From Epithemia pelagica (lineage: Eukaryota; Protista; Bacillariophyta): 64,000 bases of DNA. Positions 3,701-47,863 of the stretch are shown here, piece after piece. The notes under the pieces are model-generated. The model did not search any database, was not told the origin of the DNA, and saw nothing but the letters and a program-made list of their open reading frames with translations. Made by a program: the position numbers and the translations under genes. The DNA lies in contig OX337229.1 of NCBI GenBank assembly GCA_946965045.2, positions 4,960,001-5,024,000 on the forward strand, read 5' to 3'. Each line of letters starts with the position of its first letter. Position 1 is the stretch's first letter.

Positions 3701-4097
3701 ATTCAATGCCCGAGAAATTGGAGATCGATTCGACCCGATCCGATCCTTGTCACAAAGTCCCATGTTCCTCATGGTCATTGCTTTTACTGTGATTGCCCAG
3801 TGGTTGATTGTCCAATACGGTGGAGATTTCTCTCAGACGGAACCTCTTTCGTTTGATGAGTGGCGCCTCACGGTCGGTTTGGGATCTTTCTCTCTCCCAG
3901 TTGGCTTTTTGATGCGCTTGATTCCCGTGGCAGAAGACCCAAACACGTTTGCCGGACTGGATCGCAAGGTTGGGACAAAGAAGAAGGCCTCGTGGCTCGC
4001 CGTTCTGCTGGCGATTCTTTTGCCAATCTTTGCTGCGATTGTCTATCAGCTATATTTGGAGATTGACGAGATCGATGAAGCTACTGATAACTCTTGA
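789..4097 (+). CDS. P-type Ca2+-transporting ATPase (type IIB, PMCA/ACA-like); 2 exons, intron 2800-2871
   Basis: Motifs SALTGE, VPEGLPLAVT, phosphorylation site CSDKTGTLT, KGAAE, MVTGDN, VTGDGTNDGPALK and QFQLTVNVVA. The GT..AG intron joins the two ORFs in frame (TE-GGISMVG). Confidence 0.95.
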
Positions 4098-4238
4098 AGG
4101 AAGACAACAAGTTGAAGAATACCAGAAAATAAGAAAGTCTAAAATAGAAAGTTTTTCAAAAACTTTTAGAAAATTCGAAGAACAAAGCGACGACCTGATA
4201 TCAAAGAACAACTGGAGTGGTTCTGAGCAGTCGAAGCT

Positions 4239-7697: not shown

Positions 7698-7727
7698 TTC
7701 GGGGTTCGGGGTTCGGGGTTCGGGGGG
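7698..7727 (+). repeat. (TTCGGGG)n heptamer tandem repeat, G-quadruplex-capable
   Basis: TTCGGGG x3 plus TTCGGGGGG, ~115 nt upstream of the ATG at 7842. Confidence 0.8.
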
Positions 7728-7841
7728 TGGATTCTGGGGGCACGGGCCACGTCTCAGATGAGCACTCACGACTCACGAGTTCAGACTCACCGCTCACCGA
7801 GTACAAAACCTTAGGCAACCAACCATCAAAGAAACACCGAA

Positions 7842-9743
7842 ATGGTTGATACCACATCAAAGAATAATATCCAACAACAGCATGACGACGCCGTTGAATT
7901 GGTTCGACAAGGATTGCCGTTTTCAACTGCAAAATCCAGCAGTGAAATCCCACTGGTGAATAAAGTGTGCCCGATCAAAAGTGTGGATGACAAGAGCCTC
8001 TTCGAACCGTACTGGACTTCTCGAGGATACGCGTCTGTAGATAAACTCCAAGATTTGGTTCGGGAGGGATACAATTTGTGCTATGCAATACCAGTGAATC
8101 GAAGTGTGAACAACCCTGAACAACCAGAACAATCATCCAGCGCGACCACTGTCACCAAATCTTCGTCGGAACCGATAGCTACACCATCGATGAAAAGCAA
8201 GGAACGATATGGACCAGCCGATATTAAATCTGAAACCAACTTATGGGACCCTGTAAATGCGGCTGTCGACAATGTCACCATTCTTCGTCCATCTCATGAT
8301 GATTGGGGAATTCACAAACTTATGCTTTTATTTTGTGACGATTTCGTTCAGCACGTCTACGCATTGCCCTGGTGGCATAGCAGGCCTGATATACGGGAAG
8401 CGGTTCAACCTATTTTCGATGTACTCAACATCACAGAAGACTGTGTTGTTCGATTGCTGCTGGCGTCCCTGCCACCGGGTGCAACCATACCTGTTCACGA
8501 GGACTCTGGTGCATGGGTCACCATGACGCACAGAGTGCATGTTCCGATTATTGTGCAGCATGTGGATGAAATCTTGTTTCGCTGTGGTCCTTCGGAAGAT
8601 GCATTGGAACGCATAGATACCACACCGGGTCATGTTTTCGAAATGAACAATCAGGCAAAACACGCGGTTAGCAATTGTTCAAGCGATTACAGAGTCCATT
8701 TAATTCTGGATTACGTGGGGACGGAAGACCCTGCCCTGTCCAGGTTGCCACCAAGGATCAGCTTGAGTAAGGGTGAAAAGTTGGTACAAACGCGTCGTTC
8801 GGTAGATCGTTGGAAAGATCGCGGTTCGCGACCTACACCTTCATTCCTCATCCTCGGGGCCCAAAAAGCAGGGACCACCAGTTTGTATGAGTACATTACA
8901 CAACACCCCCTCATCCCCAAAGCCAAACGACGAGAAACACACTGTTTAGATTGGAGGTGGAACACCAAGCTGAAAACCGTCCAAGCGCAAAGGAGGTGGT
9001 GTCATCATTTCTATGAAACAGACATTCTCCACCGAAATCCGTCGTGTCTCACGGGTGACTCTACTCCGTCGTATTTGATTGACAGCCGACGAGTCATTCC
9101 ACGGCTTCAAAACGTATTTAACTGGCCACTCAAATTCTTTGTCATATTAAGAAATCCGATCAAGCGTGCAGAGTCTCATTTTGCCATGGTCACCAGCACG
9201 GAAGGTCGACCCGAACAACTCAAGGCGAGAGGTACCGAATGGAGAGAAAAGTCCTTTCGAGAAGTGGTAATGGAGGATCTAGGCAGAATGAAGCAATGTG
9301 GCTTGATTCCCTATTGGGATATTGAAAATGGAACGTTTCATGCAGAACTATTTGATTCGTTTAGTGGCACGGCCACAGAGGAACAGGCGTGGGACGCATA
9401 CCTCAAGGAGATACCACTCGGAACGGGTTCCTACGGCCTCTTGAGCCGAGGTATGTACGAACTCAATTTGAGACCCTGGTTACGGGCGTTTCAGCGGCAA
9501 GACTTCTTAATTCTCCTTCTGGAACGATTGAAATCTGATGGTGCGTCGTCTATAATGGAAACGGTCTGGGACCATCTCGGTGTACCGTCCTACCAGATAG
9601 AAGACGACAGTCCCAAAAACACACGAGAGTATGTGTCGCTTGTTGACAACGATTTGCAATCCTATTTGGAGCGTTTCTATAAACCACACAATCAGCGACT
9701 AGCCGACGTCCTTGGAGACGATTGGAGGGGGGTTTGGGCATGA
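7842..9743 (+). CDS. Fusion of an Asp/Asn beta-hydroxylase-like 2OG-Fe(II) dioxygenase domain and a PAPS-dependent sulfotransferase (heparan-sulfate O-sulfotransferase-like)
   Basis: Dioxygenase motifs LPPGATIPVHEDSG (HxD), HRVHVP, FEMNNQAKHAVSN (distal His) and YRVHLILD. Sulfotransferase motifs ILGAQKAGTTSLY (5'-PSB) and ILRNPIKRAESHF (3'-PB). Single open frame. Confidence 0.88.
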   Translation: MVDTTSKNNIQQQHDDAVELVRQGLPFSTAKSSSEIPLVNKVCPIKSVDDKSLFEPYWTSRGYASVDKLQDLVREGYNLCYAIPVNRSVNNPEQPEQSSSATTVTKSSSEPIATPSMKSKERYGPADIKSETNLWDPVNAAVDNVTILRPSHDDWGIHKLMLLFCDDFVQHVYALPWWHSRPDIREAVQPIFDVLNITEDCVVRLLLASLPPGATIPVHEDSGAWVTMTHRVHVPIIVQHVDEILFRCGPSEDALERIDTTPGHVFEMNNQAKHAVSNCSSDYRVHLILDYVGTEDPALSRLPPRISLSKGEKLVQTRRSVDRWKDRGSRPTPSFLILGAQKAGTTSLYEYITQHPLIPKAKRRETHCLDWRWNTKLKTVQAQRRWCHHFYETDILHRNPSCLTGDSTPSYLIDSRRVIPRLQNVFNWPLKFFVILRNPIKRAESHFAMVTSTEGRPEQLKARGTEWREKSFREVVMEDLGRMKQCGLIPYWDIENGTFHAELFDSFSGTATEEQAWDAYLKEIPLGTGSYGLLSRGMYELNLRPWLRAFQRQDFLILLLERLKSDGASSIMETVWDHLGVPSYQIEDDSPKNTREYVSLVDNDLQSYLERFYKPHNQRLADVLGDDWRGVWA

Positions 9744-23837: not shown

Positions 23838-25098
23838 CGTCTAAGTTGATGGAACTGGTGTTACCTCCCATTTGCGAGCCCAATGCCAGAAATGCGACCG
23901 CGCATGAAAGAGTCGCATGAAAGAGCGGGAACAGTAGACTGTCTGTATTGTATTGTAGGTCGTAGGTCAGTGGCTCATTTCACGCGGGGCCCAGCCAGTC
24001 CCGAATCATACGAAAGTCACAAGTCACCAAAGTCAGCCCAAGAAAGTTAGTTGGGCGTTGCCCGAGGACGACACTCGTACTCGTACTCGTACTCGTTGAG
24101 GAGAACAAAAATAATGTGTGCGGGAGTAAAGACTATAATCTATATTTTTTCTCGGCCCTTTTTTTGTGTTTGGGGGAGTTACCCTCTCCGATTTCCGATT
24201 CTATCTCTATCCCAGAAAAACCAGGTTATCGAGCCCAACTGTGTTAGAGGTTAGAGGGAAGAGTACGAGTAGTCCACCTAGAGACAATAGGAGAAGTTAG
24301 AAGTAACAAGTTTCACTCTTCGACTCTAGAAGACATACGAGAGTACAATGCCTTTTGCCCAAGAGGGCGGGCGAAAAGTTCTTCCATGTCGTGTGGGTCG
24401 TCAAAGTTCGAAGTGCTCGTTTCGTTTTTGGTATTGATTTTTTAAATTTTTTTTGATGTGCGATGTTCTACTTTCTACTTCTAACTTCTAACTACGAGTA
24501 GTAGATTCTCGACTCTCGATCTCGACCGCTGGCCTGCTTTCTGTTTTCTGTTATGGTTTATGGTATAAGCTGTAGATGCAGCAGCCAGCAGCGTGTTTCT
24601 GTTTCGGGTTTCTTGATCGGATATCGGATATCGGATTCCAAATTATTGTTCCAAGTTCCATGGTCGATGGTCGGAGTCCCAGGTCCCAGATCCCAGAGAT
24701 CCGAGTTCCGAGGTCCGAGCACCGAGCCTACGAGCTTATTATGATTTGCGAACTGCAATCTGTAACGAGAAATTGCGCATAAATAATGAGAAACGAGGTA
24801 TAAGAGGACGAATATGAGACTATAATAATGTAATAACGTAGAGAATCACAAACTGTCCATCATGGTCATGAGTCATGAGTCGGGAGTCGGGACTCATGAA
24901 TACTCGTAGTAGATGACAATCACAATTCACAATTCACAATCCCAAGTCCCTCTAGTAGAGGGACTTTTAGTACGATAGTCCAATTTTCGACGAAGTCCCT
25001 TACTTTGTACTGTACTTCACCGACTTTACGCATTCCCTTAGTATAGTCCCCCTCTCTCTCTCAAGGGACTGCCAGTCCCTCAGTCCATTCCCTTGGTG

Positions 25099-28000
25099 AA
25101 AATAGGGGGGAGAAGGCAGAGGAGAGGGGGAGAGGAGGGGGAGAGGAGGGGGAGAGAGAAGGAGAGAAGAAGGAGATTCCGTAAGTCAGATTCCTTCATG
25201 AAATCGATCCGCGTATTGCTCGCAGTCTCACGTTTGTTTCCTCTGACGTATGAAATGTTCTAGGAAGCTCCAAACTTCCCTCAGAGGGGAGAAGGCACTT
25301 CCCCTCCAAAACGATTAAGCCCTTCATATCGTTTCAGCACCTTTTTGTTATTGAAACGACATTCTACACTGGTACAATCCTCCCGACCATCCGATGACCT
25401 TTCACGTGGTTCTACGTAGCATGTGATGAGGCGTATCCAGTCTGTGCTTCGCATCACAATCGGAACTGCTTGCACCTCGCACAAGATCTTGTCATAATTT
25501 TTTTTGCTACGATGTTACTCACTACGAATTTTTCTTTTTGTTGTTTGTCATGCACGTATTCAGGTCAATCAAGAGAATGAAGATGGTGCCTTGTTCAAGG
25601 CTCGTTTGGGGCAGCGTCGGTCATGGGGTGGACGTCCTTTCCCTCGTTCTACGCAGTACTTCATGTACTTGACGCAACAGAACTGGGTTTGGACACGAGG
25701 TGGTGGTCCGAAGGGAGGAAAGGTGGGCATGCATGTTGGGACGGATTGAAGACCACCCCAGCCATGGGGATTGCTGTGGAATGCAAAAGGGTATTGCTGT
25801 TGACCGGGGAGTGTTGTTGGCCGTTGCTGATTTTGCTTGTACGGGTTGACAGGTTGGTTTTTCTGCCTTGTTGTCGTTGTTGTTGTTGCCGATTGCAGTA
25901 CCACCAACCCATTTGCTGTTGTTGCCATTGCAGGTGTGCTGTTTGCTGCATTTTGAGGCTCTTTGTGTTGTTGTTGTTGATCCTGCACTGTCGCTGCTGA
26001 TTGATTTGTTGCTGCCATCGTTGTTGTTGGTAAGGCTTCGCTGTTGTTTGTAACCTTTTGCTTTTTGTTGCTGGTGTTGTTCTCATCCAAATCGTCGCTC
26101 TCTTTTTCTTCTCCCTCTCTTTCCTTTCTCTTATTGCTACTGATTGCCTGTGCTTGTGCTGTTTCTTGTTGTTGTGTCTGTTGTTGCCTTTCTTGCCGTG
26201 TCTGTTGTTGTGTTTCTGGCTGTGTCTGTGGTTGTTGTATTTTGGCTGGATTCTCCTCGCTGTCCAGTTGTTGGATTTCATCTTCGACCTCTGACTCCTC
26301 CTCTGCCAAACCCAACAATGGAATGGACGTGTCATGCGGCAACCTCTTCTTGTTGCTCGCACATTTTCGGCACTGGCATCGATCGTTGAGTGGATGCTTT
26401 GGAACTTGTTGCGTGATTTCTTTTCTCGTTTCCAGGTACTCGGAGAAAAACCGTTCTCCCGTATCTTCTGGAAGCTTCTCAACCTCTGGAAAGGGAGGAC
26501 AAGAAGCTCCAGACATCGAAGCAAGTATATTGATCATGTTTGTTTTGCATGCGTTACCAAAACTCACCACCATTTCCCATCCTGCAGGCACCACTGAACG
26601 TTCTTCTTGAGACTTCGTCATGATTCTCATCTTGTGACGAATTGCCCTGTTATACTGGGCCGTGCCTGCCAAATTCAAAGCATCTGCGAGAGTTTCTCGC
26701 ATGCCACAGTTGGCAAAATGCGTCAAATTATCATGAAAGCTCTCGAGCTTACTCTCTCCTCTCAAAGGTACGTACTCCACTAGCTGGTTGCTTGATCTTG
26801 GTGATGGAGGTATCTCACGATACATTTTCTCCACGGGCAAGGGATCAGCAAGGAACTTTGCCTTCTCTTTACAGTTTTCCAGTGCTTGATGTGTTTCGGC
26901 CGTAAAAAGAGGTTGATTGGAGTGTGGATCCAATCGGCCTCGTGCTGGTGGCTTGCCAGGAGTGGAAGTGCACTTGTATTTGCACTTCCACTCCTCCAAC
27001 TTGAGGACAATCGTATCGCCACCCCGAATAATCTTCCGTAAGTTCTTTGAGTACCTCTGTCAAAAGGTCTTGGTTCCCATCATTTCACTGATCTCTTTGT
27101 CTGTGTATTGTTTCTTGGAGCTTGACATGGTTCCATTTTTCAAACAACCAACAAGTTTCTCCAAGTCTTCAGGATGGTACTCGTAGATCGCATCCAACAA
27201 ATCCTTCATGGCTATCCCAAAGTCAATGTGCCGTTGTCTGAGCGTCTTGGTTATCCTCTGTATGAAATGGAAAAGGCCAAGACGGCCCTCCAAGTCATCA
27301 ACCAACAACAACCAAAAATCCTTGCCACAAGGCCATGTGTCAGAGTACATGGCCTTGGGGCAAAACCCGGTACGTCTCAGCACTTGTTCCGCAGCATGTG
27401 CAAACTTGAGTGCTGATGTGTTGTGCACTAACACTGCACAAGCAATTTCTCCTGCCTCTGTTGCCATGGTCCACATTGCAGCTGCATTGAGGCGTCTTGG
27501 ATAATTTTTCACTACCTGGTGGGTGTGGTCGTGAGCAAACATGTGCTGGCATCTAACCCCTTGAATCTCTCTTGTGTTTCTCTCATTGTCAGACACCATC
27601 CAGGGTTGCCATTTGGAGCTTGCTCCATCGTCATATAGCTGGCGGATTGTCTCGCCAAAAGGTGGGTAGCGAACCAGAAACTCACCATCCTTTTGCATGT
27701 AGTCTTCTGATTCTTTTCCTGTAGCAGCACAATAAGAATAGTACCTCATTGTCTTGTCTTCATAGCAGGTGTTGATTCCTTCATATAGCATCCGACTGAT
27801 GTGATCCCCATTGCCATAGGTTACCATTGATGCTTCCATTATCCTCGTAGCATCTTTAGCTAGATGCGATGTTCCTCTAGCATACTTGGGTTCCACTGGG
27901 TAACACATAGCCATGTAGGGAGGCAGTCGTGCGAGCAATTCTCCATCATTTGCATAGAAGGCAGCCGAGCACCCGGCACACTTGTATCCCATAAGTATTG

Positions 28001-29206
28001 CATACTTTGGGGGACCAGACATGGCGAAAATGGGGAAAAGGGACTTGTTTTTTGAAAAGTTCGATCGCGTACGCTGGAGATTACCCCGGCAACGAGGACA
28101 ACGCAAGTGGTTACTGGGGAAAAACAGCTCCCAATCAACAACCAGGAGTTCCTGTCCCACAATCGAGTCGTACAAAGCACTCGTGTTGTCGGCAATGGGG
28201 GGTACAGTAACGGTCATATTAGTGAAGAAAGGTTTCAAATTCTCAACACAACGCTTAGAACCAAGGCACGTGTCGGTCACATAACTCGCCAACGCATGCA
28301 CAGCACGTGGGACATGCACCTCCGTAGGTACTGCTGTCACACACGTAATTACCTCAAACTTGAAATCTTCGGCTGTTGGAACATACGCGCCTTCCTCGCC
28401 ACCAACGGTAGAACTTTCCGTTGCCGTAGTCTCCGTAGTTGATTGTGTTTTTTCATTTTCAGCGTCTCTTGTCGTTGCTTTTTTCGACGAGCAATTGGGA
28501 CGATGTTCCATGAAAGTGTTGAGTGCCTCCTGTGTGACATTGGAGGCGGACAATCTCTCTGCACTGGTAAGTTGCTTGCGGATTGCTTTGGCATGGGCAG
28601 CCTGGGCCTTTTCTGAGGCCACTACCTCTGCTCCTCTTCCATCGTTCATTCCCTTGCCCCTTGTTGTTGTGTTTTTGCTGCATCTGGGGTGGTGAGGGCG
28701 ACGAGGGATGGCCATTCCTCTTGCCTTGGCCCTGCAGATGGGGCAGTCGATGTCGGACTCAAAGATGACCAAAAGGTCCATCTTTCTCCAACCTGAACGC
28801 TTCTTCCAACTCTTCTTTGGCCAACGAGAGTACTGATTTCCGTATCGTTGCGACTGTGGCCCCATGGCCTTGGCCGCTGTGAATTGTGCTGCAGAACTCA
28901 TGATCTTTATTTGTTATTCTAACTTATTGAAGTGTATCCTCTTTTCCAGGCTTCTGACCATGCTCAAAAGGGTCATGAGATGGTCAGAAGAGGACTTGTC
29001 GCAATGGTCGACTTGGCCATGCCATGGGCGACCGTGAAGGACCGACCGGATCGGCTGATGGAATCTTCCCTCCATGTTTTTTGTCCGTGATTCGATGGGT
29101 TCCCGGGACACGGTAAGACACTTGTAACGACATTTGTTTCCTAAGTGATTTTTTGTGAAACGACATTTCTAACCCAATCATATTGCTGCCTTTTGAAACT
29201 AACACC
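25099..29206 (-). mobile_element. TIR-less DDE transposon, copy 1 (4108 bp), with a 9-bp TSD
   Basis: Colinear with 43164-47234. CCCTTGGTG is duplicated at 25090-25098 and 29207-29215. The 37-bp length difference from copy 2 is fully explained by +27, +11 and -1 bp indels. Confidence 0.9.
25569..28901 (-). pseudogene. Transposase of copy 1, interrupted by a CGA>TGA nonsense codon at 27060-27062
   Basis: ORFs 27060-28901 and 25569-26999 together match the 1101-aa ORF of copy 2. Copy 2 reads TTT CGA CAG where copy 1 reads TTT TGA CAG. Confidence 0.9.
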
Positions 29207-29576
29207 CCCTTGGTGTCACTCACAACCGACTATAGTCTCTACCGTCATTCCCCCCCCCCCCCCCCAGCCTTCAATCGTACTATATTCCCTCTCTCGAGTC
29301 CCACCAGTCTCTCATATCGTACTTTAAGTCCTAAAGTCAAGTACCTCCAGCCAAATATATAGACTGTATAGTACAAAATCACTCCTCATCTCCATATGAA
29401 ACGACTACAACCATGATATCATGTGTTTATCATTCCAAATCAACACAAGAAAACAGATGAGGATAATCACAACACAGAGGTACGTTACCCATATCTTGGT
29501 TGCTTTGCCTCTCTTCAACAATCAAACCATTGTCCTCTCTTATCTTGTCTCATACAACGAGACGAGGTCGAATCAA

Positions 29577-30520
29577 ATGGAAGGAGTCCAAGATACCGTT
29601 TCGACATTGGAAGATCCTTCCAGGAGGGATCCCCCTTCCTCCAACAAGAACAAATCTTCTTCCAACAAGAACAAGCCACGGCCCTCATCCAGTAAGAAGA
29701 AGACTTCCAGTTCAAAGAAGAAAAAGAAGAAGAAGCCTCCTCCTGCAGGTTCCAACGAATTGAAACGAAAACCCTCTGCACTCGAAGCCGAGAAGAAAAT
29801 TGTTGAGGAAGAGCTTGCACCAGTTGTGGAAGCCAAAGATGATTTCTTGGCGAATGAGAAATCTCTTGTTCCTCTTCTTGATTCTCCAAATCCATTATTC
29901 TTCGGCCATCCTAGTTGTTCACCGTACTGGCGTTGGATCCTTCATGTTGACTGGCCGGTGTTTGAACAATATCTGATCGATAACTCGGATGATATTCCCC
30001 AAACCCCCGGCATTCTCAAGCTGATAAACAACATGAAGACCAAAACCAAAATAGGAGACATGAAGAATCTCAAGTCGGCATTGACTCCCCAAGCCAAGAA
30101 TAAAGCCATGAAAGAGAAATACTCGAATCTTGTCCGTTATGTTGTCATCTGCCCACGCTGTTTTGCGAACAAAGACAAACCACTGGACGAATGTATCCTA
30201 CTTTGTGGGCTTAACAAAACATCCAACATAGCAACTCATATCGGCAAGTACCACAAAGATGTTCAAATTCAAGACGACGCCGATGATCCCTCTCCGATGA
30301 AAAGCCAAGGCACGCTAAGCTCCATGATCATAAAGGATGCATCCAAATCTACTGCTTCTACGGAACTAAGGCAGCTCATGTATCGGTTCATCAATGACTG
30401 CGCACTACCGGCAATTACGGCCGAGAAAAAAGAATTCCGAGATCTCATCTGGTACGCAATCAACAACAGTGCTGCTCTCCGCGACACACCGGCAGAGATC
30501 ATGAGCCGGCGGGAAATAAG
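29577..30520 (+). pseudogene. N-terminal part of a hAT transposase (BED zinc finger plus DNA-binding region); catalytic DDE domain absent
   Basis: ICPRC...KTSNIATHIGKYH (BED C2H2), then YRFINDCALPAITAEKKEFRDLI and IMSRREI. The frame then runs into the antisense strand of the glycosylase gene. Confidence 0.75.
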
Positions 30521-31198
30521 AGACCATTTATCCATTGGAACCCATGCTTCCAAATGTTTTGATGTCGCTAAGCTGCTGAGTTTTGGAGGCACCCAACCCA
30601 TCTTGTGTGCCCAGCGAATAACATGTATGTCTGAAGGTATACCGTCGACACGTCCGAATGCCGCCTCCAGTATTATGCATGCAGTCTTATACCCAATGCC
30701 ATCGAGGGTCATCAACTCGTGGATTGTAATGTTGTTGGGAATTATCCCATTGTGGCGCTGTAGAAAGTAGTCGGCCGCATTGACAATGCGCTCGGCGTTG
30801 ACGTTATATCGTCCAAGTCCCGATATTAGGGAGCACATAGCATCCATGCCGTACTTGTTGGCGATCTCCGACACAGCATCGGCAGACGTCATTCCACAAG
30901 CAAAAAGACGGGGCATTACGGAACTGAGTTGTAAATCTGAAGTGCTTGAACTCATACAGATCGTCATCAAGACCATGAATGGCCGATCTGAAAGAGGATC
31001 GTCCGCGTAATTGTTAATCCATGACTCCCAATCATCCCGAGGAGCCACGATTCCAAAGTGTTTCAACTCTTGGTGAAACATGACCAGTTGTCCGAGTTCT
31101 GTCAGTCGATGGTCTAGAACAGTTGCAGGAATGGGAGGGACTTTCACATGGAGATCGGATGGACGGAGTTTCTTGAGTTTGGGTGGCATGCCAGGCAT
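30269..31198 (-). CDS. Endonuclease III (Nth)-like HhH-GPD DNA glycosylase inside the hAT element; native C-terminus lost
   Basis: PFMVLMTICMSSSTSD corresponds to Nth PFELLIAVLLSAQATD. HhH motif LMTLDGIGYKTACIILEAAFG keeps the catalytic Lys, and GIPSDIHVIR keeps the catalytic Asp. Homology ends near 30520 and there is no [4Fe-4S] Cys motif. Confidence 0.85.
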   Translation of the reverse strand: MPGMPPKLKKLRPSDLHVKVPPIPATVLDHRLTELGQLVMFHQELKHFGIVAPRDDWESWINNYADDPLSDRPFMVLMTICMSSSTSDLQLSSVMPRLFACGMTSADAVSEIANKYGMDAMCSLISGLGRYNVNAERIVNAADYFLQRHNGIIPNNITIHELMTLDGIGYKTACIILEAAFGRVDGIPSDIHVIRWAHKMGWVPPKLSSLATSKHLEAWVPMDKWSLISRRLMISAGVSRRAALLLIAYQMRSRNSFFSAVIAGSAQSLMNRYMSCLSSVEAVDLDASFMIMELSVPWLFIGEGSSASS

Positions 31199-31383
31199 GT
31201 GGCGATCATCGTTGTCTTTTTGTTTATATTTGATGGTTTTTTTAGAACGTGAAATCGATTGAAGAAATAATGATATAATGGTGTTGCGAGAACGAGTGGA
31301 ATACGAATGTGTTGGATGCTGGGTATGCTGGGTAGCTTTCTTCTGTGGAGATTTAAGAAGATTCTTCTTTTTGGGAGATTTGT

Positions 31384-32124
31384 TCACAGCAGGTGGATTG
31401 TCTTTTTTTTGTCGGCATGTAGGGGAGGACAGTGTATCTTGTCGTATAGATGCGTCAATTGGGCAATATAAGGGGTGATGCAACTTGGAACACAGTCCTC
31501 TTGATCGGATTCTTCGCTGTTACATTCGCATAGAATATATTCGTTGACTAGTTGTTGAGGTTGTTGTGTGCAATGGAATCCAGTTGATGTGTGCATCATC
31601 CAGGACAGAATGATAGATTGGGATGAAACATTTGGACATTTTTGTTTTACACGATGGGTGTTTCTCATACATTCGTGAAAATGAGGGCATTGATCAATCT
31701 GTAGCGTGGGTGTACATTGAACAGTAAGTGTAAGACTCTTGCAATGATCAGGCATGAAGGGTTGAATTTCATGATCTGATGAATTCGGAACTTGCGGAGA
31801 TGGACCGTGTAGATGAGTAATGACAATGCCAGCAATGATTGTAAGCTTGTCGTCGTACTCCAAGGTGAACAATCTGCAAGCGTGAGTGTTGGACTTGCTC
31901 GTGTTTTCTTCTTTGCAAGAAATGGACCCAGAATTCTGAATTAACCATGCAACAGTAAATCGTTTCACCCATAGATGAAGTTGGCGTCGAAGAAGGTCTT
32001 TGGGAGATTGCTCTTGGATATATTTTTTCGTGTCTTCAAAGTAAGCAAAATTCGACTCCAGAATGAACTTCAGATTACATCGTGAAGAGAAATGAAGGTA
32101 TTTGCGAGAAGTTGATGGTTCCAT
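31384..32124 (-). CDS. Unknown ORF inside the hAT element, possibly the N-terminal half of the glycosylase gene
   Basis: Open frame from the ATG at 32124. It overlaps the glycosylase frame, and a one-base shift at the A8 run (31403-31410) would fuse them. Confidence 0.5.
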   Translation of the reverse strand: MEPSTSRKYLHFSSRCNLKFILESNFAYFEDTKKYIQEQSPKDLLRRQLHLWVKRFTVAWLIQNSGSISCKEENTSKSNTHACRLFTLEYDDKLTIIAGIVITHLHGPSPQVPNSSDHEIQPFMPDHCKSLTLTVQCTPTLQIDQCPHFHECMRNTHRVKQKCPNVSSQSIILSWMMHTSTGFHCTQQPQQLVNEYILCECNSEESDQEDCVPSCITPYIAQLTHLYDKIHCPPLHADKKKTIHLL

Positions 32125-32536
32125 ATACCTTGTTCCTTGAGTTGTGGAGGAATGGTTTGGGGGAGGAAAGTTGAGTGTGGGAGACACTTTTGTTCGATGG
32201 TTGATGGAGTGAGAGTGAGGTGCGAGGGTGTGAGGTGTGTTGCTGCTGATAGCGTTGTTGTGATGGGCGTGGGTCTCATGTGGGTCTCATGTACGTATAG
32301 TAGCGTGGTGGAGTATACATGGATTTCGTACTGTGAAGTCATGACTTAGGGACTATAGTACCATAGTACATGAAGATTATGAAAGGGACCATAGTCCCCA
32401 TAGTATAGTCCAATGTTGCATTTCGATGTACTATAGTCATCGGTGATAGTCTATGGGTGAGTGGAATTGGGACTATCAGTCAATGGACTATTCCATGTGT
32501 GGTGGCTAGGGTGAACTATAGTCATTTAGTACAGTC

Positions 32537-32606
32537 TACCGCGTTTGTAAATGGGATTGGTAGTCTCTTAGTACCGCGTTTGTAAATGGGATTAGTAGTC
32601 TCTTAG
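32537..32606 (+). repeat. 35-bp tandem duplication in the hAT right subterminal region
   Basis: TACCGCGTTTGTAAATGGGATT(G/A)GTAGTCTCTTAG x2. Confidence 0.9.
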
Positions 32607-33124
32607 TATAGTCCCATTAGAGTGTGAGATGGAGTGTAGTACCTATGGTCTAGTCAGGTACATATCGTAGATGGACTGAAAGTCATGTAGTCTAGTCTCG
32701 ACATGTTTGGGTGATACTTCACAGCTCTGCCCTCTACCCTCTAGCCTCTAGCCTCTAATGATTGAACAACGAGAAACAAGAGGAAGGAGTATTGTAAGTA
32801 AGGACGAGCGAATAACACAAAACACAATGTCAGAACAAGGAGTCAAGGAGCCGCCAACCAGTAACCAATAAACAACAAGAAACAAGACAACAAACTGAAC
32901 TCGTATGCGTCTTTCTGTAATTTGTCCGGTGGGTCACTCGTCACTCCAATTTCCAAATGTCTCGTGTACCCCACAACAGCTTTTCTCTGCTGCTCTACTA
33001 CTTCCAACGCTGGTATGCACATCCGCTGGAGAATAGGCTACCTGTGCTACCCTGATGAAAATGCTTTGCTACTAGGAGTACCTACTAGGAGTGTACTTAC
33101 GCCTCTAGGAGTAGTAACTTCTCC

Positions 33125-42691: not shown

Positions 42692-43163
42692 GGCCAAAGT
42701 CGAGTTCCCCAATGTCTTTGGTTACAAAAAACACGATTCTAGGACACCAGACGTTCAATGGACCAGTTATGTCGATTCAGAGCGTCAATATTGTCAAGCT
42801 GTTACCCAACTTTCGGAAAGTCCAAACCTACTTTCACTTGAATGACGACGTCCTTGGATTGATTGTCATCAATCGATCCAACTAAGCAAAAAGGAAAAAA
42901 CATTAATGAGTGAGGTTGGCCGCCCCCACCAACACTTGCCCGCGACACGGAATTGTTTTGTTGATATGGTGAGAGCGCGCGAGCGCGAGTTCTTCTATCA
43001 ATTCAAATAGCCAGCATTTCTGGTACAAATTCCACGAGGATTCAACGTACATTCTGGGGGTCCGGTGTCAATGACTCGGGAACCTGCGCGTACGCAGAAA
43101 GACACTTTTGCGCGGGGAACACTCCCCCACATTCCCAATAGATACACGCCCCATCCCCAGACG

Positions 43164-46100
43164 AAAATAGGGGGGGAGAAGGCAGAGGAGAGGGGGAGAG
43201 GAGGGGGAGAGAGAAGGAGAGAAGAAGGAGATTCCGTAAGTCAGATTCCTTCATGAAATCGATCCGCGTATTGCTCGCAGTCTCACGTTTGTTTCCTCTG
43301 ACGTATGAAATGTTCTAGGAAGCTCCAAGCTTCCCTCAGAGGGGAGAAGGCACTTCCCCTCCAAAACGATTAAGCCCTTCATGTCGTTTCAGCACCTTTT
43401 TGTTATTGAAACGACATTCTACACTGGTACAATCCTCCCGACCATCCGATGACCTTTCACGTGGTTCTACGTAGCATGTGATGAGGCGTATCCAGTCTGT
43501 GCTTCGCATCACGATCGGAACTGCTTGCACCTCGCACAAGATCTTGACATAATTTTTTTTGCTACGATGTTACTCACTACGAATTTTTCTTTTTGTTGTT
43601 TGTCATGCAGGTATTCAGGTCAATCAAGAGAATGAAGATGGTGCCTTGTTCAAGGCTCGTTTGGGGCAGCGTCGGTCATGGGGTGGACGTCCTTTCCCTC
43701 GTTCTACGCAGTACTTCATGTACTTGACGCAACAGAACTGGGTTTGGACACGAGGTGGTGGTCCGAAGGGAGGAACGGTGGGCATACATTGCGGGACGGA
43801 TTGAAGACCACCCCAGCCATGGGGATTGCTGTGGAATGCAAAGGGGTATTGCTGTTGATCGGGGAGTGTTGTTGGCCGTTGCTGATTTTGCTTGTACGGG
43901 TTGACAGGTTGGTTTTTCTGTCTTGTTGTCGTTGTTGTTGTTGTCGATTGCAGTACCACCAACCCATTTGCTGTTGTTGCCATTGCAGGTGTGCTGTTTG
44001 CTGCATTTTGAGGCTCTTTGTGTTGTTGTTGTTGATCCTGCACTGTCGCTGCTGATTGATTTGTTGCTGCCATCGTTGTTGTTGGTAAGGCTTCGCTGTT
44101 GTTTGTAACCTTTTGCTTTTTGTTGCTGGTGTTGTTCTCATCCAAATCGTCGCTCTCTTTTTCTTCTCCCTCTCTTTCCTTTCTCTTATTGCTACTGATT
44201 GCCTGTGCTTGTGCTGTTTCTTGTTGTTGTGTCTGTTGTTGTGTTTCTTGCCGTGTCTGTTGTTGTGTTTCTGGCTGTGTCTGTGGTTGTTGTATTTGTT
44301 GGATTTCATCTTCGACCTCTGACTCCTCCTCTGCCAAACCCAACAATGGAATGGACGTGTCATGCGGCAACCTCTTCTTGTTGCTCGCACATTTTCGGCA
44401 CTGGCATCGATCGTTGAGTGGATGCTTTGGAACTTGTTGTGTGATTTCTTTTCTCGTTTCCAGGTACTCGGAGAAAAACCGTTCTCCCGTATCTTCTGGA
44501 AGCTTCTCAACCTCTGGAAAGGGAGGACGAGAAGCTCCAGACATCGAGGCAAGTATATTGATCATGTTTGTTTTGCATGCGTTACCAAAACTCACCACCA
44601 TTTCCCATCCTGCAGGCACCACTGAACGTTCTTCTTGAGACTTCGTCATGATTCTCATCTTGTGACGAATTGCCCTGTTAAACTGGGCGGTGCCTGCCAA
44701 ATTCAAAGCATCTGCGAGAGTTTCTCGCATGCCACAGTTGGCAAAATGCGTCAAATTGTCATGAAAGCTCTCGAGCTTACTCTCTCCTCTCAAAGGTACG
44801 TACTCCACTAGCTGGTTGCTTGATCTTGGTGATGGAGGTATCTCACGATACATTTTCTCCACGGGCAAGGGATCAGCAAGGAACTTTGCCTTCTCTTTAC
44901 AGTTTTCCAGTGCTTGATGTGTTTCGGCCGTAAAAAGAGGTTGATTGGAGTGTGGATCCAATCGGCCTCGTGCTGGTGGCTTGCCAGGAGTGGAAGTGCA
45001 CTTGTATTTGCACTTCCACTCCTCCAAGTTGAGGACAATCGTATCGCCACCCCGAATAATCTTCCGTAAGTGCTTTGAGTACCTCTGTCGAAAGGTCTTT
45101 GTTCCCATCATTTCACTGATCTCTTCGTCTGTGTATTGTTTCTTGGAGCTTGACATGGTTCCATTTTTCAAAGAACCAACAAGTTTCTCCAAGTCTTCAG
45201 GATGGTACTCGTAGATTGCATCCAACAATTCCTTCATGGCTATCCCAAAGTCAATGTGCCGTTGTCTGAGCGTCTTGGTGATCCTCTGTATGAAATGGAA
45301 AAGGCCAAGACGGCCCTCCAAGTCATCAACCAACAACAACCAAAAATCCTTGCCACAAGGCCATGTGTCAGAGTACATGGCCTTGGGGCAAAACCCGGTA
45401 CGTCTCAGCACTTGTTCCGCAGCATGTGCAAACTCGAGTGCTGATGTGTCGTGCACTAACACTGCACAAGCAATTTCTCCTGTCTCTGTTGCCATGGTCC
45501 ACATTGCAGCTGCATTGAGGCGTCTTGGATAATTTTTCACTACCTGGTGGGTGTGGTCGTGAGCAAACATGTGCTGGCATCTAACCCCTTGAATCTCTCT
45601 TGTGTTTCTCTCATTATCAGACACCATCCAGGGTTGCCACTCGGAGCTTGCTCCATCATCATATAGCTGGCGGATTGTCTCGCCTAAAGGTGGGTAGCGA
45701 ACCAGAAACTCACCATCCTTTTGCACGTAGTCTTCTGATTCTTTTCCTGTAGCAGCACAATAAGAATAGTATCTCATTGTCTTGTCTTCATAGTAGGTGT
45801 TGATTCCTTCATAAAGCATCCGACTAATGTAATCCCCATTGCCATAGGTTACCATTGATGCTTCCATAATCCTCGTAGCATCTTTAGCTAGATGCGATGT
45901 TCCTCTAGCATACTTGGATTCCACTGGGTAACACATAGCCATGTAGGGAGGCAGTCGTGCGAGCAATTCTCCATCATTCGCATAGAAGGCAGCCGAGCAC
46001 CCGGCACACTTGTATCCCATAAGTATTGCATACTTTGGGGGACCAGACATGGCGAAAATGGGGAAAAGGGACTTGTTTTTTGAAAAGTTCGATCGCGTAC

Positions 46101-47234
46101 GCTGGAGATTACCCCGGCAACGAGGACAACGCAAGTGGTGACTGGGGAAAAACAGCTCCCAATCAACAACCAGGAGTTCCTGTCCCACAATCGAGTCGTA
46201 CAAAGCACTCGTGTTGTCGGCAATGGGGGGTACAGTAACGGTAATATTAGTGAAGAAAGGTTTCAAATTCTCAACACAACGCTTAGAACCAAGGCACGTG
46301 TCGGTCACATAACTCGCCAACGCATGCACAGCACGTGGGACATGCACCTCCGTAGGTACTGCTGTCACACGCATAATTACCTCAAACTTGAAATCTTCGG
46401 CTGTTGGAACATACACGCCTTCCTCGCCACCAACGGTAGAACTTTCCGTTGCCGTAGTCTCCGTAGTTGATTGTGTTTTTTCATTTTCAGCGTCTCTTGT
46501 CGTTGCTTTTTTCGACGAGCAATTTGGACGATGCTCCATGAAAGTGTTGAGTGCCTCCTGTGTGACATTGGAGGCGGACAATCTCTCTGCACTGGTAAGT
46601 TGCTTGCGGATTGCTTTGGCATGGGCAGCCTGGGCCTTTTCTGAGGCCACTACCTCTGCTCCTCTTCCATCGTTCATTCCCTTGCCCCTTGTTGTTGTGT
46701 TTTTGCTGCATCTGGGGTGGTGAGGGCGATGAGGGATGGCCATTCCTCTTGCCTTGGCCCTGCAGATGGGGCAGTCAATGTCGGACTCAAAGATGACCGA
46801 AAGGTCCATCTTTCTCCAACCTGAACGCTTCTTCCAACTCTTCTTTGGCCAACGAGAGTACTGATTTCCGTATCGTTGCGACTGTGGCCCCATGGCCTTG
46901 GCCGCTGTGAATTGTGCTGCAGAACTCATGATCTCTATTTGTTATTCTAACTTATTGAAGTGTATCCTCTTTTCCAGGCTTCTGACCATGCTCAAAAGGG
47001 TCATAAGATGGTCAGAAGAGGACTTGTCGCAATGGTCGACTTGGCCATGCCATGGGCGACCGTGAAGGACCGACCGGATCGGCTGATGGAATCTTCCCTC
47101 CATGTTTTTTGTCCGTGATTCGATGGGTTCCCGGGACACGGTAAGACACCTGTAACGACATTTGTTTCCTAAGTGATTTTTTGTGAAACGACATTTCTAA
47201 CCCAATCATATTGCTGCCTTTTGAAACTAACACC
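43164..47234 (-). mobile_element. TIR-less DDE transposon, copy 2 (4071 bp), with an intact ORF
   Basis: Same termini as copy 1 (AAAATAGGGGGG... and ...GAAACTAACACC) in the same orientation. No clean TSD. Confidence 0.9.
43624..46929 (-). CDS. 1101-aa putative DDE transposase (MULE/Dada-like, DUF6729-type signature)
   Basis: Candidate catalytic residues in FAHDHTHQ (D), MYSDTWP (D), RLGLFHFIQR (xxxH motif) and GESKLESFH (E). Zn-binding motifs CPIC..HHPRC, CPRC..YKCAGC and C-terminal CC..C..GRPPHDRRC. Gln/Thr-rich linker. Confidence 0.75.
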   Translation of the reverse strand: MSSAAQFTAAKAMGPQSQRYGNQYSRWPKKSWKKRSGWRKMDLSVIFESDIDCPICRAKARGMAIPHRPHHPRCSKNTTTRGKGMNDGRGAEVVASEKAQAAHAKAIRKQLTSAERLSASNVTQEALNTFMEHRPNCSSKKATTRDAENEKTQSTTETTATESSTVGGEEGVYVPTAEDFKFEVIMRVTAVPTEVHVPRAVHALASYVTDTCLGSKRCVENLKPFFTNITVTVPPIADNTSALYDSIVGQELLVVDWELFFPSHHLRCPRCRGNLQRTRSNFSKNKSLFPIFAMSGPPKYAILMGYKCAGCSAAFYANDGELLARLPPYMAMCYPVESKYARGTSHLAKDATRIMEASMVTYGNGDYISRMLYEGINTYYEDKTMRYYSYCAATGKESEDYVQKDGEFLVRYPPLGETIRQLYDDGASSEWQPWMVSDNERNTREIQGVRCQHMFAHDHTHQVVKNYPRRLNAAAMWTMATETGEIACAVLVHDTSALEFAHAAEQVLRRTGFCPKAMYSDTWPCGKDFWLLLVDDLEGRLGLFHFIQRITKTLRQRHIDFGIAMKELLDAIYEYHPEDLEKLVGSLKNGTMSSSKKQYTDEEISEMMGTKTFRQRYSKHLRKIIRGGDTIVLNLEEWKCKYKCTSTPGKPPARGRLDPHSNQPLFTAETHQALENCKEKAKFLADPLPVEKMYREIPPSPRSSNQLVEYVPLRGESKLESFHDNLTHFANCGMRETLADALNLAGTAQFNRAIRHKMRIMTKSQEERSVVPAGWEMVVSFGNACKTNMINILASMSGASRPPFPEVEKLPEDTGERFFSEYLETRKEITQQVPKHPLNDRCQCRKCASNKKRLPHDTSIPLLGLAEEESEVEDEIQQIQQPQTQPETQQQTRQETQQQTQQQETAQAQAISSNKRKEREGEEKESDDLDENNTSNKKQKVTNNSEALPTTTMAATNQSAATVQDQQQQHKEPQNAANSTPAMATTANGLVVLQSTTTTTTTRQKNQPVNPYKQNQQRPTTLPDQQQYPFAFHSNPHGWGGLQSVPQCMPTVPPFGPPPRVQTQFCCVKYMKYCVERGKGRPPHDRRCPKRALNKAPSSFS

Positions 47235-47863
47235 CCCCAATCCCCAAGGGCTTTTTGCTTTTTGCGTTGAGCTATTCTATATTCTATACCTTATTCTTGT
47301 ATCTCTAATCTCTATTCCATGTTCCATGTTTCATACTCGGGTAAGATAGAAAAGAGAAAAGAAGTGGGGGATAAACAAGAGGCGAGCAATCGATTATCAA
47401 TGCAAGCGTGTACACATGGTAAACGGAGGGAATATTGTCGCATCCTATCGTTGAGACAAACTATCCTTGCTGTATACGTTGGAAGTAACAAATGATGAGC
47501 TTGTACCTCTGTCGAACTGTGGAATTTACAACAACCACCTTAGGTTCATGGATAAGCGTCATTCAACTGTTCACTGACCCCTACCCAGATCCCGGTACAA
47601 TGGCTGGCTTAATCTTCGAGGATTTGTTGGAAAACACCTCCCCTACTGGGTTTATGAGAAAGTTCATGTCCACTCTATGTTCCCAATCCAGTTTCATCCA
47701 ACTATTGCACTCAGCATGAACTAAAGAGACAGCAGTTGAGTATCGATCAATTGACTTAGTGAACGCTGAACCCGACTTTTCCATTAATGGTGCAATCTGC
47801 TGCGTTCAAAGGAAAAGAAACACATAACATCTTGATAGCAAATTTCATTGACTTGTCGAGAAT

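What the first reader, a model, noticed from the sequence alone, without database searches (positions are those of the whole stretch)
24956..32736. hAT transposon carrying an endonuclease III-type DNA glycosylase as cargo
Inside TIR/8-bp-TSD boundaries, a BED-finger hAT transposase fragment (+) converges on an HhH-GPD glycosylase (-) that keeps the catalytic Lys and Asp. The two meet near 30520, where the transposase catalytic domain and the glycosylase C-terminus are both missing. This implies an internal deletion of a parent element encoding both. HhH-GPD enzymes include the 5mC-removing DEMETER/ROS1 proteins, so a transposon-borne glycosylase could counter methylation silencing or process transposition and repair intermediates (hypothesis). 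A passive Pack-type capture of host NTH1 is the alternative.
Basis: partly seen in the sequence, partly recalled or inferred. Interest (0 to 1): 0.82.

Follow-up and report, generated by a model that had tools for sequence, protein, structure and literature searches.

The report
Dead copy of glycosylase-carrying hAT transposon
This stretch is a broken, immobile copy of a diatom cut-and-paste (hAT) transposon whose intact relatives always carry, next to the transposase, a conserved endonuclease III-like DNA base-excision enzyme. I found no paper describing such a transposon gene, and it may help the element resist DNA-level silencing or decay.

Summary
Window 24959-32729 is one copy of a multi-copy hAT family. 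The glycosylase remnant keeps its catalytic Lys and Asp. The two gene remnants meet at 30516/30517, where 3,317 bp are missing compared with full-length copies elsewhere in the genome.

Three corrections:
- 25099-29206 is an unrelated 4.1-kb nested transposon.
The true ends are CAGGGCTGTG...CACAGCTCTG.
- The left TIR has been replaced by an 11-nt palindromic copy of the flank.

- An intact copy (L014) has a 654-aa glycosylase and a 1,402-aa transposase, convergent and 62 bp apart.
- At least 93 glycosylase cores exist in this diatom genome. 67 pair with a transposase core, and all 67 are convergent.
- Ten diverged elements enclose both genes within TIRs and perfect 8-bp TSDs.
- The two gene trees share 10 of 12 splits, third codon positions are saturated, and Lys and Asp are invariant.
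- The host NTH1 is a separate gene (29% identity), so Pack-type capture is rejected.
- A sediment-metagenome element from another species has the same layout.

Function is untested. This scan already reported the family at eight or more other places in this genome. No publication was found.

The parts
24944..24966 (.). 23-bp palindrome (11-nt arms around base 24955) that replaces the left TIR.
   Evidence: All other copies read CAGGGCTGTG before TAGTACG, whereas the window has flank-derived sequence there. The palindrome was read directly from the sequence.
24948..24955 (.). Left copy of the probable 8-bp target-site duplication (CCCTCTAG).
   Evidence: It matches the right flank CCCTCTAC at 7 of 8 bases. 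The flank is a CCTCTA-type short repeat, so this is weak evidence on its own.
24968..25098 (+). Left subterminal region of the hAT element, with its first 10 bp lost. It carries AGTCC/GGACT repeats.
   Evidence: 96-99% identity to L013-L018; the motif is 13 times denser in the terminal 300 bp than in the interior.
25099..29206 (-). Nested insertion of an unrelated 4.1-kb repeat family, flanked here by a direct repeat (CCC)TTGGTG. It has two minus-strand ORFs: 27060-28901 (613 aa) and 25569-26999 (476 aa).
   Evidence: a second copy lies at 43163-47237 (97.8% identity); other hAT copies have the empty site; at least 22 full-length copies in the genome at 96-98%; the 613-aa protein resembles DUF6729 proteins by features only (a lead).
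29215..30517 (+). 5' region and N-terminal 366 codons of the hAT transposase (ATG at 29421). It includes the CCHH BED-like finger at 30150-30254. The catalytic core and hATC domain are deleted.
   Evidence: 98.8% identity to L013 3094-4392; 5 synonymous and 4 non-synonymous changes against L014, with no indel..
30516..30517 (.). Junction of a 3,317-bp internal deletion, with 2-bp microhomology (AT).
   Evidence: L013 position 4392 joins to 7709.
30518..32124 (-). Glycosylase gene remnant, covering about codons 74-608 of the 654 in L014. It holds the family-specific N-terminal domain, the linker and most of the HhH-GPD core. Lys codon 30686-30688, Asp codon 30629-30631. A 1-bp deletion near 31411 shifts the frame, and the last ~46 codons are deleted.
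   Evidence: Against L014 there are 12 synonymous and 17 non-synonymous changes, consistent with neutral decay of this copy.
32125..32729 (+). Right subterminal region, ending in the right TIR CACAGCTCTG (32720-32729). It contains a 36-bp tandem duplication at 32537-32608.
32730..32737 (.). Right copy of the probable target-site duplication (CCCTCTAC).

Best explanation
SHOWN
- Window 24959-32729 is a dead, non-autonomous derivative of a two-gene hAT transposon of a diatom.
- The parent is about 6.9 kb. It has TIRs CAGGGCTGTG/CAGAGCTGTG and subterminal AGTCC repeats.
- It encodes a ~1,400-aa transposase with a CCHH finger, a catalytic core and a hATC domain.
- Converging on it, 62 bp apart, is a ~580-650-aa protein made of a family-specific N-terminal alpha/beta domain and an NTH1/endonuclease III-like HhH-GPD core. 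That core has no iron-sulfur cluster.
- The window copy lost 3.3 kb across the ends of both genes, with 2-bp microhomology at the junction. That is the kind of internal deletion that produces Ds-like elements.
- It also lost its left TIR, has a frameshift in the glycosylase, and later received a 4.1-kb transposon.
- In the family, the glycosylase is a stable, selected and co-inherited transposon gene. It came from one old acquisition of a cluster-less NTH1-like gene.

INFERRED
- The enzyme is a bifunctional glycosylase/AP lyase, because Lys and Asp are invariant.
- It probably acts on the element's own DNA for the element's benefit.
- My ranking of roles: removal of 5-methylcytosine or its deamination products, countering methylation silencing and CpG decay, about 40%; repair or processing of transposition intermediates, about 20%; general protection of the element from base damage, about 20%; something else, about 20%.
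For: Structure of the window copy.

Intact parent: (L014: glycosylase 3303-5267 on the plus strand, transposase 5330-9538 on the minus strand).

hAT identity:
- 7 of 7 transposases exceed the Pfam Dimer_Tnp_hAT gathering score.
- Ten elements have perfect 8-bp TSDs and CAGGGTTGTGA-type TIRs around both genes.
- The CCHH motif and candidate D408/D474/E958 are invariant.

Glycosylase identity:
- PF00730; human NTHL1 E 1.8e-14.
- The AF2 model's best Foldseek matches are NTHL1 and EndoIII.
- K551 and D570 are invariant in 14 sequences.
- No Cys-x6-Cys-x2-Cys-x5-Cys motif in any of 15 sequences.

Family size and linkage:
- 97 glycosylase and 79 transposase matches in the genome.
- 67 pairs, all convergent, with 1.1-2.4 kb between the cores.

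Selection: identity at codon positions 1/2/3 is about 0.76/0.90/0.40 in the core, dS is saturated, and the core (mean p-distance 0.49) is better conserved than the transposase (0.63).

Co-inheritance: Mantel r 0.82-0.91, p = 1e-4. The ML trees share 10 of 12 splits, against at most 3 in 5,000 label permutations.

Not the host gene: L022 is the NTH1 orthologue (E 1e-42 to human NTHL1) and only 29% identical to the transposon enzyme. The transposon clade is monophyletic beside cluster-less NTH1-like proteins.

Other species: L040/L041 from a sediment metagenome have at most 70% nucleotide identity to this genome and the same two genes and TIRs.

Context for the methylation idea:
- At least six C5-DNMT loci.
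- 26 of 49 private C>T/G>A changes among copies fall at CpG.
Against: - There is no biochemical, expression or methylation data, so every functional statement is inference.
- The core lacks the Fe-S cluster and other features of the known 5mC glycosylases (DME/ROS1). Nothing in the sequence identifies the substrate.
- A related hAT lineage (L042/L043) has a perfect TSD and an intact transposase but an unrelated ORF in the glycosylase position. The glycosylase is therefore not required for hAT transposition as such.
- L013 has no TSD.
- The CpG-biased decay shows that copies still suffer deamination.
- Outside this genome, linkage to a hAT transposase is shown for only one environmental element. 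Other external contigs are too short to tell.
- The palindrome-as-hairpin reading of the left end rests on one junction.
Confidence: 0.88

Rival explanations
1. Passive (Pack-type) capture: a hAT element recently picked up a piece of the host NTH1 gene, which is carried along without function.
For: The window copy itself is broken and evolves neutrally: 12 synonymous and 17 non-synonymous changes against L014, plus a frameshift. hAT elements are known to transduplicate host fragments (general knowledge).
Against: - Host NTH1 (L022) is only 29% identical.
- The gene is full-length and intronless, and it is intact in 15 of 15 diverged elements examined.
- Third codon positions are saturated while second positions are ~90% conserved.
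- The gene trees are congruent.
- The catalytic residues are invariant.
Confidence: 0.02
2. The glycosylase is an ordinary host repair gene, and hAT elements merely tend to sit next to it or its paralogues.
For: A multigene family of glycosylases could in principle be a host expansion.
Against: - Both genes lie inside the same TIR/TSD boundaries at ten loci, each with a different TSD and flanks.
- Orientation and spacing are fixed at 67 loci.
- Copies are dispersed on most contigs, with recent ones at 96-99% identity.
- A distinct single host NTH1 exists.
Confidence: 0.02
3. The glycosylase is a mechanistic co-factor of transposition rather than an anti-silencing or anti-decay factor. For example, it might nick or process donor, hairpin or gap-repair intermediates, or bias repair towards copying the element.
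For: - It is tightly linked to and co-evolves with the transposase.
- The invariant Lys implies AP-lyase strand cleavage.
- The conserved N-terminal domain of unknown fold could bind the transposase or the element ends.
Against: - No other hAT needs such a factor (general knowledge).
- The L042/L043 lineage has a fresh TSD without it.
- Deletion derivatives such as the window copy were presumably mobilised in trans.
Confidence: 0.2
4. The window element is a chimera of two unrelated fragments, a transposase piece and a glycosylase piece brought together by rearrangement. On this view it is not a deletion derivative of one element.
For: The two remnants abut abruptly and the left end is abnormal.
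Against: Both halves are collinear with single full-length elements L013 and L014 at 98-99% identity. They differ only by one clean 3,317-bp gap with 2-bp microhomology. Other copies carry different internal deletions of the same parent.
Confidence: 0.01

Closest known systems
Ac/Ds-type hAT transposons (autonomous element plus internal-deletion derivatives)
   Same: 8-bp TSDs, short CAG-type TIRs, subterminal short repeats, and a transposase with a hATC dimerisation domain and an N-terminal CCHH finger. Non-autonomous copies arise by internal deletion with microhomology, as in the window copy.
   Different: Classical hAT elements encode only the transposase. This lineage has a second, convergent, conserved gene for a DNA glycosylase, and unusually long transposases (1,220-1,440 aa) with acidic tails.
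TET/JBP dioxygenase genes carried by fungal DNA transposons (KDZ, hAT7, IS3EU and others; PMC12730594)
   Same: A DNA-base-modifying enzyme with a plausible anti-methylation role sits inside TIR/TSD boundaries of DNA transposons, including hAT.
   Different: The enzyme class differs (base excision rather than oxidation) and so does the host group (diatom rather than fungi). According to that paper, TET/JBP genes moved often between transposon superfamilies. Here the glycosylase tree matches the transposase tree at 10 of 12 splits, which indicates stable vertical co-inheritance.
Endonuclease III / NTHL1 (HhH-GPD bifunctional glycosylases)
   Same: Best sequence and fold matches. The catalytic Lys in the helix-hairpin-helix and the Asp are conserved.
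   Different: There is no [4Fe-4S] cluster motif. There are ~330-400 extra N-terminal residues with a confidently predicted domain of no recognised fold. Identity to the host's own NTH1 is only 29%.
DEMETER/ROS1 5-methylcytosine glycosylases of plants
   Same: HhH-GPD enzymes with catalytic Lys and Asp that act on methylated transposons. This is the functional analogy behind the anti-silencing hypothesis.
   Different: DME/ROS1 have an Fe-S cluster, an interrupted catalytic domain and a conserved C-terminal domain (general knowledge). None of these is seen here, and no specific sequence relationship was found.
VANC anti-silencing proteins of Arabidopsis VANDAL (Mutator) transposons and TnpA of Spm
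   Same: Transposon-encoded accessory proteins that cause loss of DNA methylation at the element's own copies. TnpA does so through host ROS1-type glycosylases (bioRxiv 10.64898/2026.08.24.746577).
   Different: Those proteins are not enzymes of base excision and instead recruit host machinery. Here the transposon would carry the enzyme itself.

Membership tests
hAT superfamily of DNA transposons | 8-bp target-site duplication | tested here: met
   Ten diverged family members have perfect 8-bp TSDs, all different, and the L042 lineage also has one. The window copy's flanks match at 7/8. L013 has none.
hAT superfamily of DNA transposons | Short terminal inverted repeats of the CAG... type | tested here: met
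   The family consensus is CAGGGTTGTGA at both ends. This subfamily has CAGGGCTGTG/CAGAGCTGTG. In the window only the right TIR is present (32720-32729).
hAT superfamily of DNA transposons | Transposase with the C-terminal hAT dimerisation domain (PF05699) | tested here: met
   7 of 7 intact transposases score 21.5-32.4 bits against a cut-off of 21.4. The domain is deleted from the window copy.
hAT superfamily of DNA transposons | RNase H-like DDE catalytic core | tested here: inconclusive
   Invariant D408 (HDxW), D474 (NDNT) and E958 (QERxFS) fit the hAT signature blocks known to me. However, there was no Pfam or PDB sequence match to the core and the transposase was not folded.
hAT superfamily of DNA transposons | N-terminal BED-type zinc finger | tested here: inconclusive
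   C244-x2-C247...H273-x4-H278 is invariant in 15 transposases and present in the window at 30150-30254. Pfam zf-BED gave no hit.
HhH-GPD superfamily, endonuclease III/NTH1 branch | HhH-GPD fold | tested here: met
   PF00730 at 26.8-27 bits against a cut-off of 26.2. Human NTHL1 E 1.8e-14. Foldseek's top hits are NTHL1 (7rdt, TM by target 0.67) and EndoIII.
HhH-GPD superfamily, endonuclease III/NTH1 branch | Catalytic Lys (bifunctional) and Asp | tested here: met
   K551 and D570 (L014 numbering) are invariant in 14 diverged sequences. The window codons are 30686-30688 and 30629-30631.
HhH-GPD superfamily, endonuclease III/NTH1 branch | C-terminal [4Fe-4S] cluster loop (Cys-x6-Cys-x2-Cys-x5-Cys) | tested here: not met
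   The motif is absent from all 15 transposon glycosylases, which have 0-2 Cys in the last 60 residues. The host NTH1-like ORF also lacks it.
DEMETER/ROS1 5mC glycosylases | Fe-S cluster plus an interrupted glycosylase domain and a conserved C-terminal domain | tested here: not met
   There is no Fe-S motif. The core is continuous and ends ~45 residues after the last conserved helix. No DME-like region appeared in the Pfam or PDB searches.
DEMETER/ROS1 5mC glycosylases | Excision of 5-methylcytosine | not testable with these tools
   This needs an enzyme assay.
Pack-type transduplicated host gene fragments | Recent capture: high nucleotide identity to a host parent gene, fragmentary, not conserved among diverged elements | tested here: not met
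   Identity to host NTH1 is 29% at the protein level. The ORFs are full-length and intact in 15 elements whose transposases are as low as 32% identical. Purifying selection is evident.

The most novel reading that the evidence does not exclude
These hAT elements encode their own base-excision 'eraser'. A cluster-less NTH1-derived glycosylase/lyase would be aimed at the element's own DNA by a new N-terminal domain. There it would remove 5-methylcytosine, or the T:G/U:G products of its deamination. That would make it the first transposon-borne enzymatic counter-defence that works by base excision against methylation silencing and CpG decay.
Probability: 0.3. Interest if true: 0.9.

Novelty: new variant of a known kind. 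Interest (0 to 1): 0.72.

Why it matters
Transposons are known to carry proteins that recruit host demethylation, and in fungi to carry TET/JBP oxidases. I found no description of a transposon lineage that keeps its own DNA glycosylase.

Here the gene has been held with the transposase through divergence down to about 32% transposase identity. It is better conserved than the transposase and occurs in at least two species. That argues it matters to the element.

If the enzyme removes methylated or deaminated cytosine, it would be a new kind of counter-defence in the conflict between transposons and genome silencing. It would also be a compact, iron-sulfur-free glycosylase with a possible built-in targeting domain, which is of interest to DNA-repair and epigenome-editing research. 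It would also give a handle on how diatom genomes control mobile DNA.

The window copy adds the Ds-like end of the life cycle: an internal deletion, loss of one TIR with a hairpin-like footprint, and a nested insertion.

Tried and rejected
I worked with smaller requests: 14 further elements, the host NTH1 locus and two extra loci. The alignments and trees use 14-15 elements, so they are a sample and not the whole family.
- NG86 dN/dS failed because dS is saturated in nearly all between-subfamily pairs. I used identity by codon position instead.
- PDB sequence search with the 914-aa transposase piece found nothing. Pfam finds only hATC.
- N-terminal domain of the glycosylase: Foldseek against PDB gave no E <= 0.001, VIA-align wide gave a best Z of 4.8, and the Atlas gave TM <= 0.34. 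No fold was assigned.
- JGI metagenome scan with the family alignment returned one 31%-identity hit, probably a canonical Nth.
- External short contigs (L035-L038, L044-L046): their truncated convergent ORFs show no similarity to the transposases by blastx or by HMM. Linkage there is open.
- The word-index protein search found only proteins from another assembly of this same organism. The exhaustive HMM search was needed to find external relatives.
- TSD search for L013, L023, L025, L032, L033 found none, or the locus was cut too short.
- The nested 4.1-kb element has no TIR, and no consistent TSD between its two window copies. I left it unclassified.


Full report
WHAT IS IN THE WINDOW

The window is G000:C2:4960001-5024000 of a 60.5-Mb, 23-contig genome. 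The genome has at least 11 silicon-transporter genes, so it is a diatom.

A self-comparison shows that 25098-29209 is repeated at 43163-47237 with 97.8% identity. Searching the rest of the claimed element against the genome splits it exactly at 30516/30517. The left part (29215-30517) and the right part (30516-32729) each recur at 96-99% identity on contigs C18, C8, C16, C3 and C17.

In those copies the 135 bp at 24959-25093 run straight into the equivalent of 29215. The 4.1 kb in between is therefore a later insertion into the window copy. It is flanked there by (CCC)TTGGTG.

In L013 (C18) and L014 (C8) the two halves are separated by a further 3,317 bp. The window copy thus carries an internal deletion, with a 2-bp microhomology at the junction. 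Other copies carry different deletions or truncations of the same parent. This is the pattern expected for an autonomous element and its non-autonomous derivatives.

THE PARENT ELEMENT

L014 is intact:
- a 654-aa glycosylase ORF (3303-5267, plus strand);
- a 1,402-aa transposase ORF (5330-9538, minus strand);
- the two converge, with 62 bp between their stop codons.

L013 differs by one stop codon in each gene.

The long window ORFs that overlap at 30269-30770 are read-through past the junction into the antisense strand of the other gene.

Compared with L014, the window copy keeps:
- transposase codons 1-366, including the CCHH finger at 30150-30254;
- glycosylase codons up to about 608, with the catalytic Lys (30686-30688) and Asp (30629-30631).

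It also has a 1-bp deletion near 31411. Its substitutions look neutral: 12 synonymous and 17 non-synonymous.

A 5-bp indel near the annotated start lies upstream of the Met at which the family's conserved region begins (32122-32124). It is probably in the leader.

THE ENDS

All other copies begin CAGGGCTGTG and end CACAGCTCTG. The window keeps the right end (32720-32729). On the left, the first 10 bp are replaced, and the sequence 24944-24966 is a perfect palindrome with 11-nt arms built from the flank.

The real flanks are CCCTCTAG and CCCTCTAC, a 7/8 match.

hAT transposases leave hairpins on flanking DNA (established for the superfamily). I therefore read the palindrome as a footprint of an abortive one-ended cleavage and repair. 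That reading is an inference from a single junction.

AGTCC/GGACT motifs are 13 times denser in the terminal 300 bp than inside the element, as is usual for hAT subterminal binding sites.

IS THE GLYCOSYLASE A TRANSPOSON GENE?

A six-frame search of the genome gave these results:
- The 235-aa glycosylase core finds 97 matches at 48-100% identity, most in open frames of 590-750 aa.
- The transposase core finds 79 scored matches at 33-100% identity, in frames of 1,200-1,450 aa.
- Of 93 substantial glycosylase matches, 67 have a scored transposase core within 6 kb. All 67 are convergent, with 1.1-2.4 kb between the cores.
- Several of the unpaired ones are deletion derivatives, are interrupted by insertions, or had transposase candidates that the tool did not score.

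I fetched 14 further diverged elements, and all have both ORFs intact. In ten of the elements examined, both genes lie between CAGGGTTGTGA-type TIRs and perfect 8-bp TSDs, which differ from locus to locus. Seven of seven transposases pass the Pfam gathering score for the hAT dimerisation domain. The CCHH motif and candidate catalytic D, D and E residues are invariant.

SELECTION AND CO-INHERITANCE

Between subfamilies, synonymous sites are saturated. In the glycosylase core, identity at codon positions 1/2/3 is about 0.76/0.90/0.40. This shows strong purifying selection on the lineages that gave rise to the copies.

The core is more conserved than the transposase (mean p-distance 0.49 against 0.63). 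Lys and Asp are invariant.

Distances of the two proteins are correlated (Mantel r 0.82 for the core and 0.91 for the N-terminal part, p = 1e-4). Maximum-likelihood trees share 10 of 12 internal splits. The two conflicting glycosylase splits have support of 31 and 41. Label permutation gives at most 3 shared splits. The two genes have therefore travelled together.

ORIGIN

The genome's NTH1 orthologue is a separate single locus: L022, 455 aa, E 1e-42 to human NTHL1. It is 29% identical to the transposon enzyme.

None of the transposon enzymes has the Fe-S cluster motif. The host ORF lacks it too, and no downstream exon carrying it was seen within 1.1 kb.

In a core tree, the transposon enzymes form one clade on a long stem. 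Several other cluster-less long-branch proteins are successive outgroups, and the clade sits beside the cluster-less NTH1-like group that holds the host gene. Fe-S-bearing NTH1s lie further out. That is a FastTree on 192 columns and I did not inspect the support values, so it is tentative. It fits one old acquisition and not a recent capture.

STRUCTURE

AlphaFold2 with the 14-sequence alignment gives a confident helical C-terminal domain. Its best PDB matches are human NTHL1 and endonuclease III.

The N-terminal domain (residues ~78-305) was modelled alone at pLDDT 89 and pTM 0.81. It looks like a duplicated beta-beta-alpha-alpha-beta unit. Its invariant residues are Cys, Trp, His, Cys, Cys, Trp and Pro. 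It has no convincing match in PDB or the ESM Atlas.

OUTSIDE THIS GENOME

The word-index search found only six proteins, all from ENA assembly ERZ21939226. That assembly is the same organism: 100% identity over 4 kb of host genes.

A profile search of 1.84 billion representatives found 44 proteins at E <= 1e-30. There is a gap after these, and canonical Nth proteins start near 1e-28.

Most of the 44 come from that same assembly. Some come from other samples: sediment metagenome PRJEB13118, ERZ27267782, Logan SRR23447908, and JGI contigs labelled 'endonuclease III'. The contigs I compared with this genome (L035, L036, L038, L041) are at most about 65-70% identical to it at the DNA level.

Two contigs, of 7.3 and 8.7 kb, carry the glycosylase with a convergent 1,363-aa hAT transposase between CAGGGTTATGA-type TIRs. 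In both gene trees this element nests among the diatom's own lineages.

CONTEXT FOR FUNCTION

- The genome has at least six C5 DNA-methyltransferase loci.
- Among six copies of this subfamily there are 114 private substitutions. Of these, 49 are C>T or G>A, and 26 of those fall at CpG. By my own rough count of CpG sites in the element, that is several-fold more than expected. It is the signature of deamination of methylated CpG.
- A related hAT lineage (L042/L043; TSD AGTGGAAC) has an unrelated 411-447-aa ORF where the glycosylase normally sits. The glycosylase is therefore not needed for transposition as such.

Together these observations make an accessory role on the element's DNA, against silencing or against decay, the most likely one. 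It is still untested.

LITERATURE AND EARLIER NOTES

Five full-text searches found no transposon-encoded HhH-GPD glycosylase. The nearest analogue is TET/JBP genes in fungal DNA transposons, including hAT7 (PMC12730594). A 2026 preprint shows that Spm TnpA needs host ROS1-type glycosylases for its anti-silencing effect.

This scan had already reported the same family at eight or more other places in this genome, with the same reading. I re-tested the main claims independently.

LIMITS

The trees and selection tests rest on 14-15 elements.

Noticed in passing
window 25099-29206 and 43163-47237: Two copies of a 4.1-kb repeat family with at least 22 near-full-length copies at 96-98% identity in the genome. 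It has two same-strand ORFs (613 and 476 aa) and no Pfam hit. By language-model features only, the 613-aa protein (which has CxxC pairs) resembles DUF6729 proteins, with KDZ/CxC transposon proteins lower on the list. I found no TIRs and no consistent TSD. It is probably a recently active, unclassified DNA transposon.
   Followed up: partly
L042 1282-7968 (G000:C7) and L043 (G000:C2:5835000-5843400): A related hAT lineage with a perfect 8-bp TSD (AGTGGAAC) and TIR CAGGGTATTGA. Its transposase is 43% identical to the L033 type. In the glycosylase position it has an unrelated convergent ORF of 411-447 aa with no Pfam hit. The 'second gene slot' is conserved but its content has been swapped or was never the glycosylase. 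The tree is unrooted, so the direction is unknown.
   Followed up: partly
L022 1251-2618 (G000:C1:6217750-6219117): The host's NTH1 orthologue (E 1e-42 to human NTHL1) seems to lack the Cys-x6-Cys-x2-Cys-x5-Cys iron-sulfur motif. Similar cluster-less NTH1-like proteins (P0068, P0076 and others) exist in public data. A cluster-less eukaryotic NTH1 lineage may be worth a look in its own right.
   Followed up: partly
window 24944-24966: A perfect palindrome with 11-nt arms, made from flanking DNA, sits exactly where the element's left TIR should be. It looks like P-nucleotide-type repair of a hairpinned flank after a one-ended, abortive excision.
   Followed up: partly
L013 2953 and 9897 (G000:C18): This full-length copy has no TSD. 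Its immediate flanks are reverse complements of each other over 5 bp (CAACC / GGTTG). I have no explanation for this.
   Followed up: no
L015 and L016 (G000:C16:2537774 and 2558663): Two truncated copies with identical left flanks lie 21 kb apart. This is a segmental duplication and not two separate insertions. Similar twin hits 20-40 kb apart occur on C10 (1305474/1325825 and 1826022/1866962).
   Followed up: no
L045 536-2926 (JGI 3300060842): A 796-aa environmental protein (P0055) with more than one matched stretch to the glycosylase profile, possibly two tandem glycosylase-like domains. With P0071 it forms a long-branch outgroup to the transposon clade in the core tree. Its neighbours show no transposase similarity.
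   Followed up: partly
window 32537-32608: A 36-bp tandem duplication (97% identity) in the right subterminal region of the hAT element. It is also present in L013 and L014, judging by the overlapping alignments.
   Followed up: no
copies L013-L018 and the window copy: Private substitutions among copies are biased towards CpG>TpG/CpA: 26 of 114 in total, and 26 of the 49 C>T/G>A changes. This suggests the elements are, or were, CpG-methylated in this diatom.
   Followed up: partly
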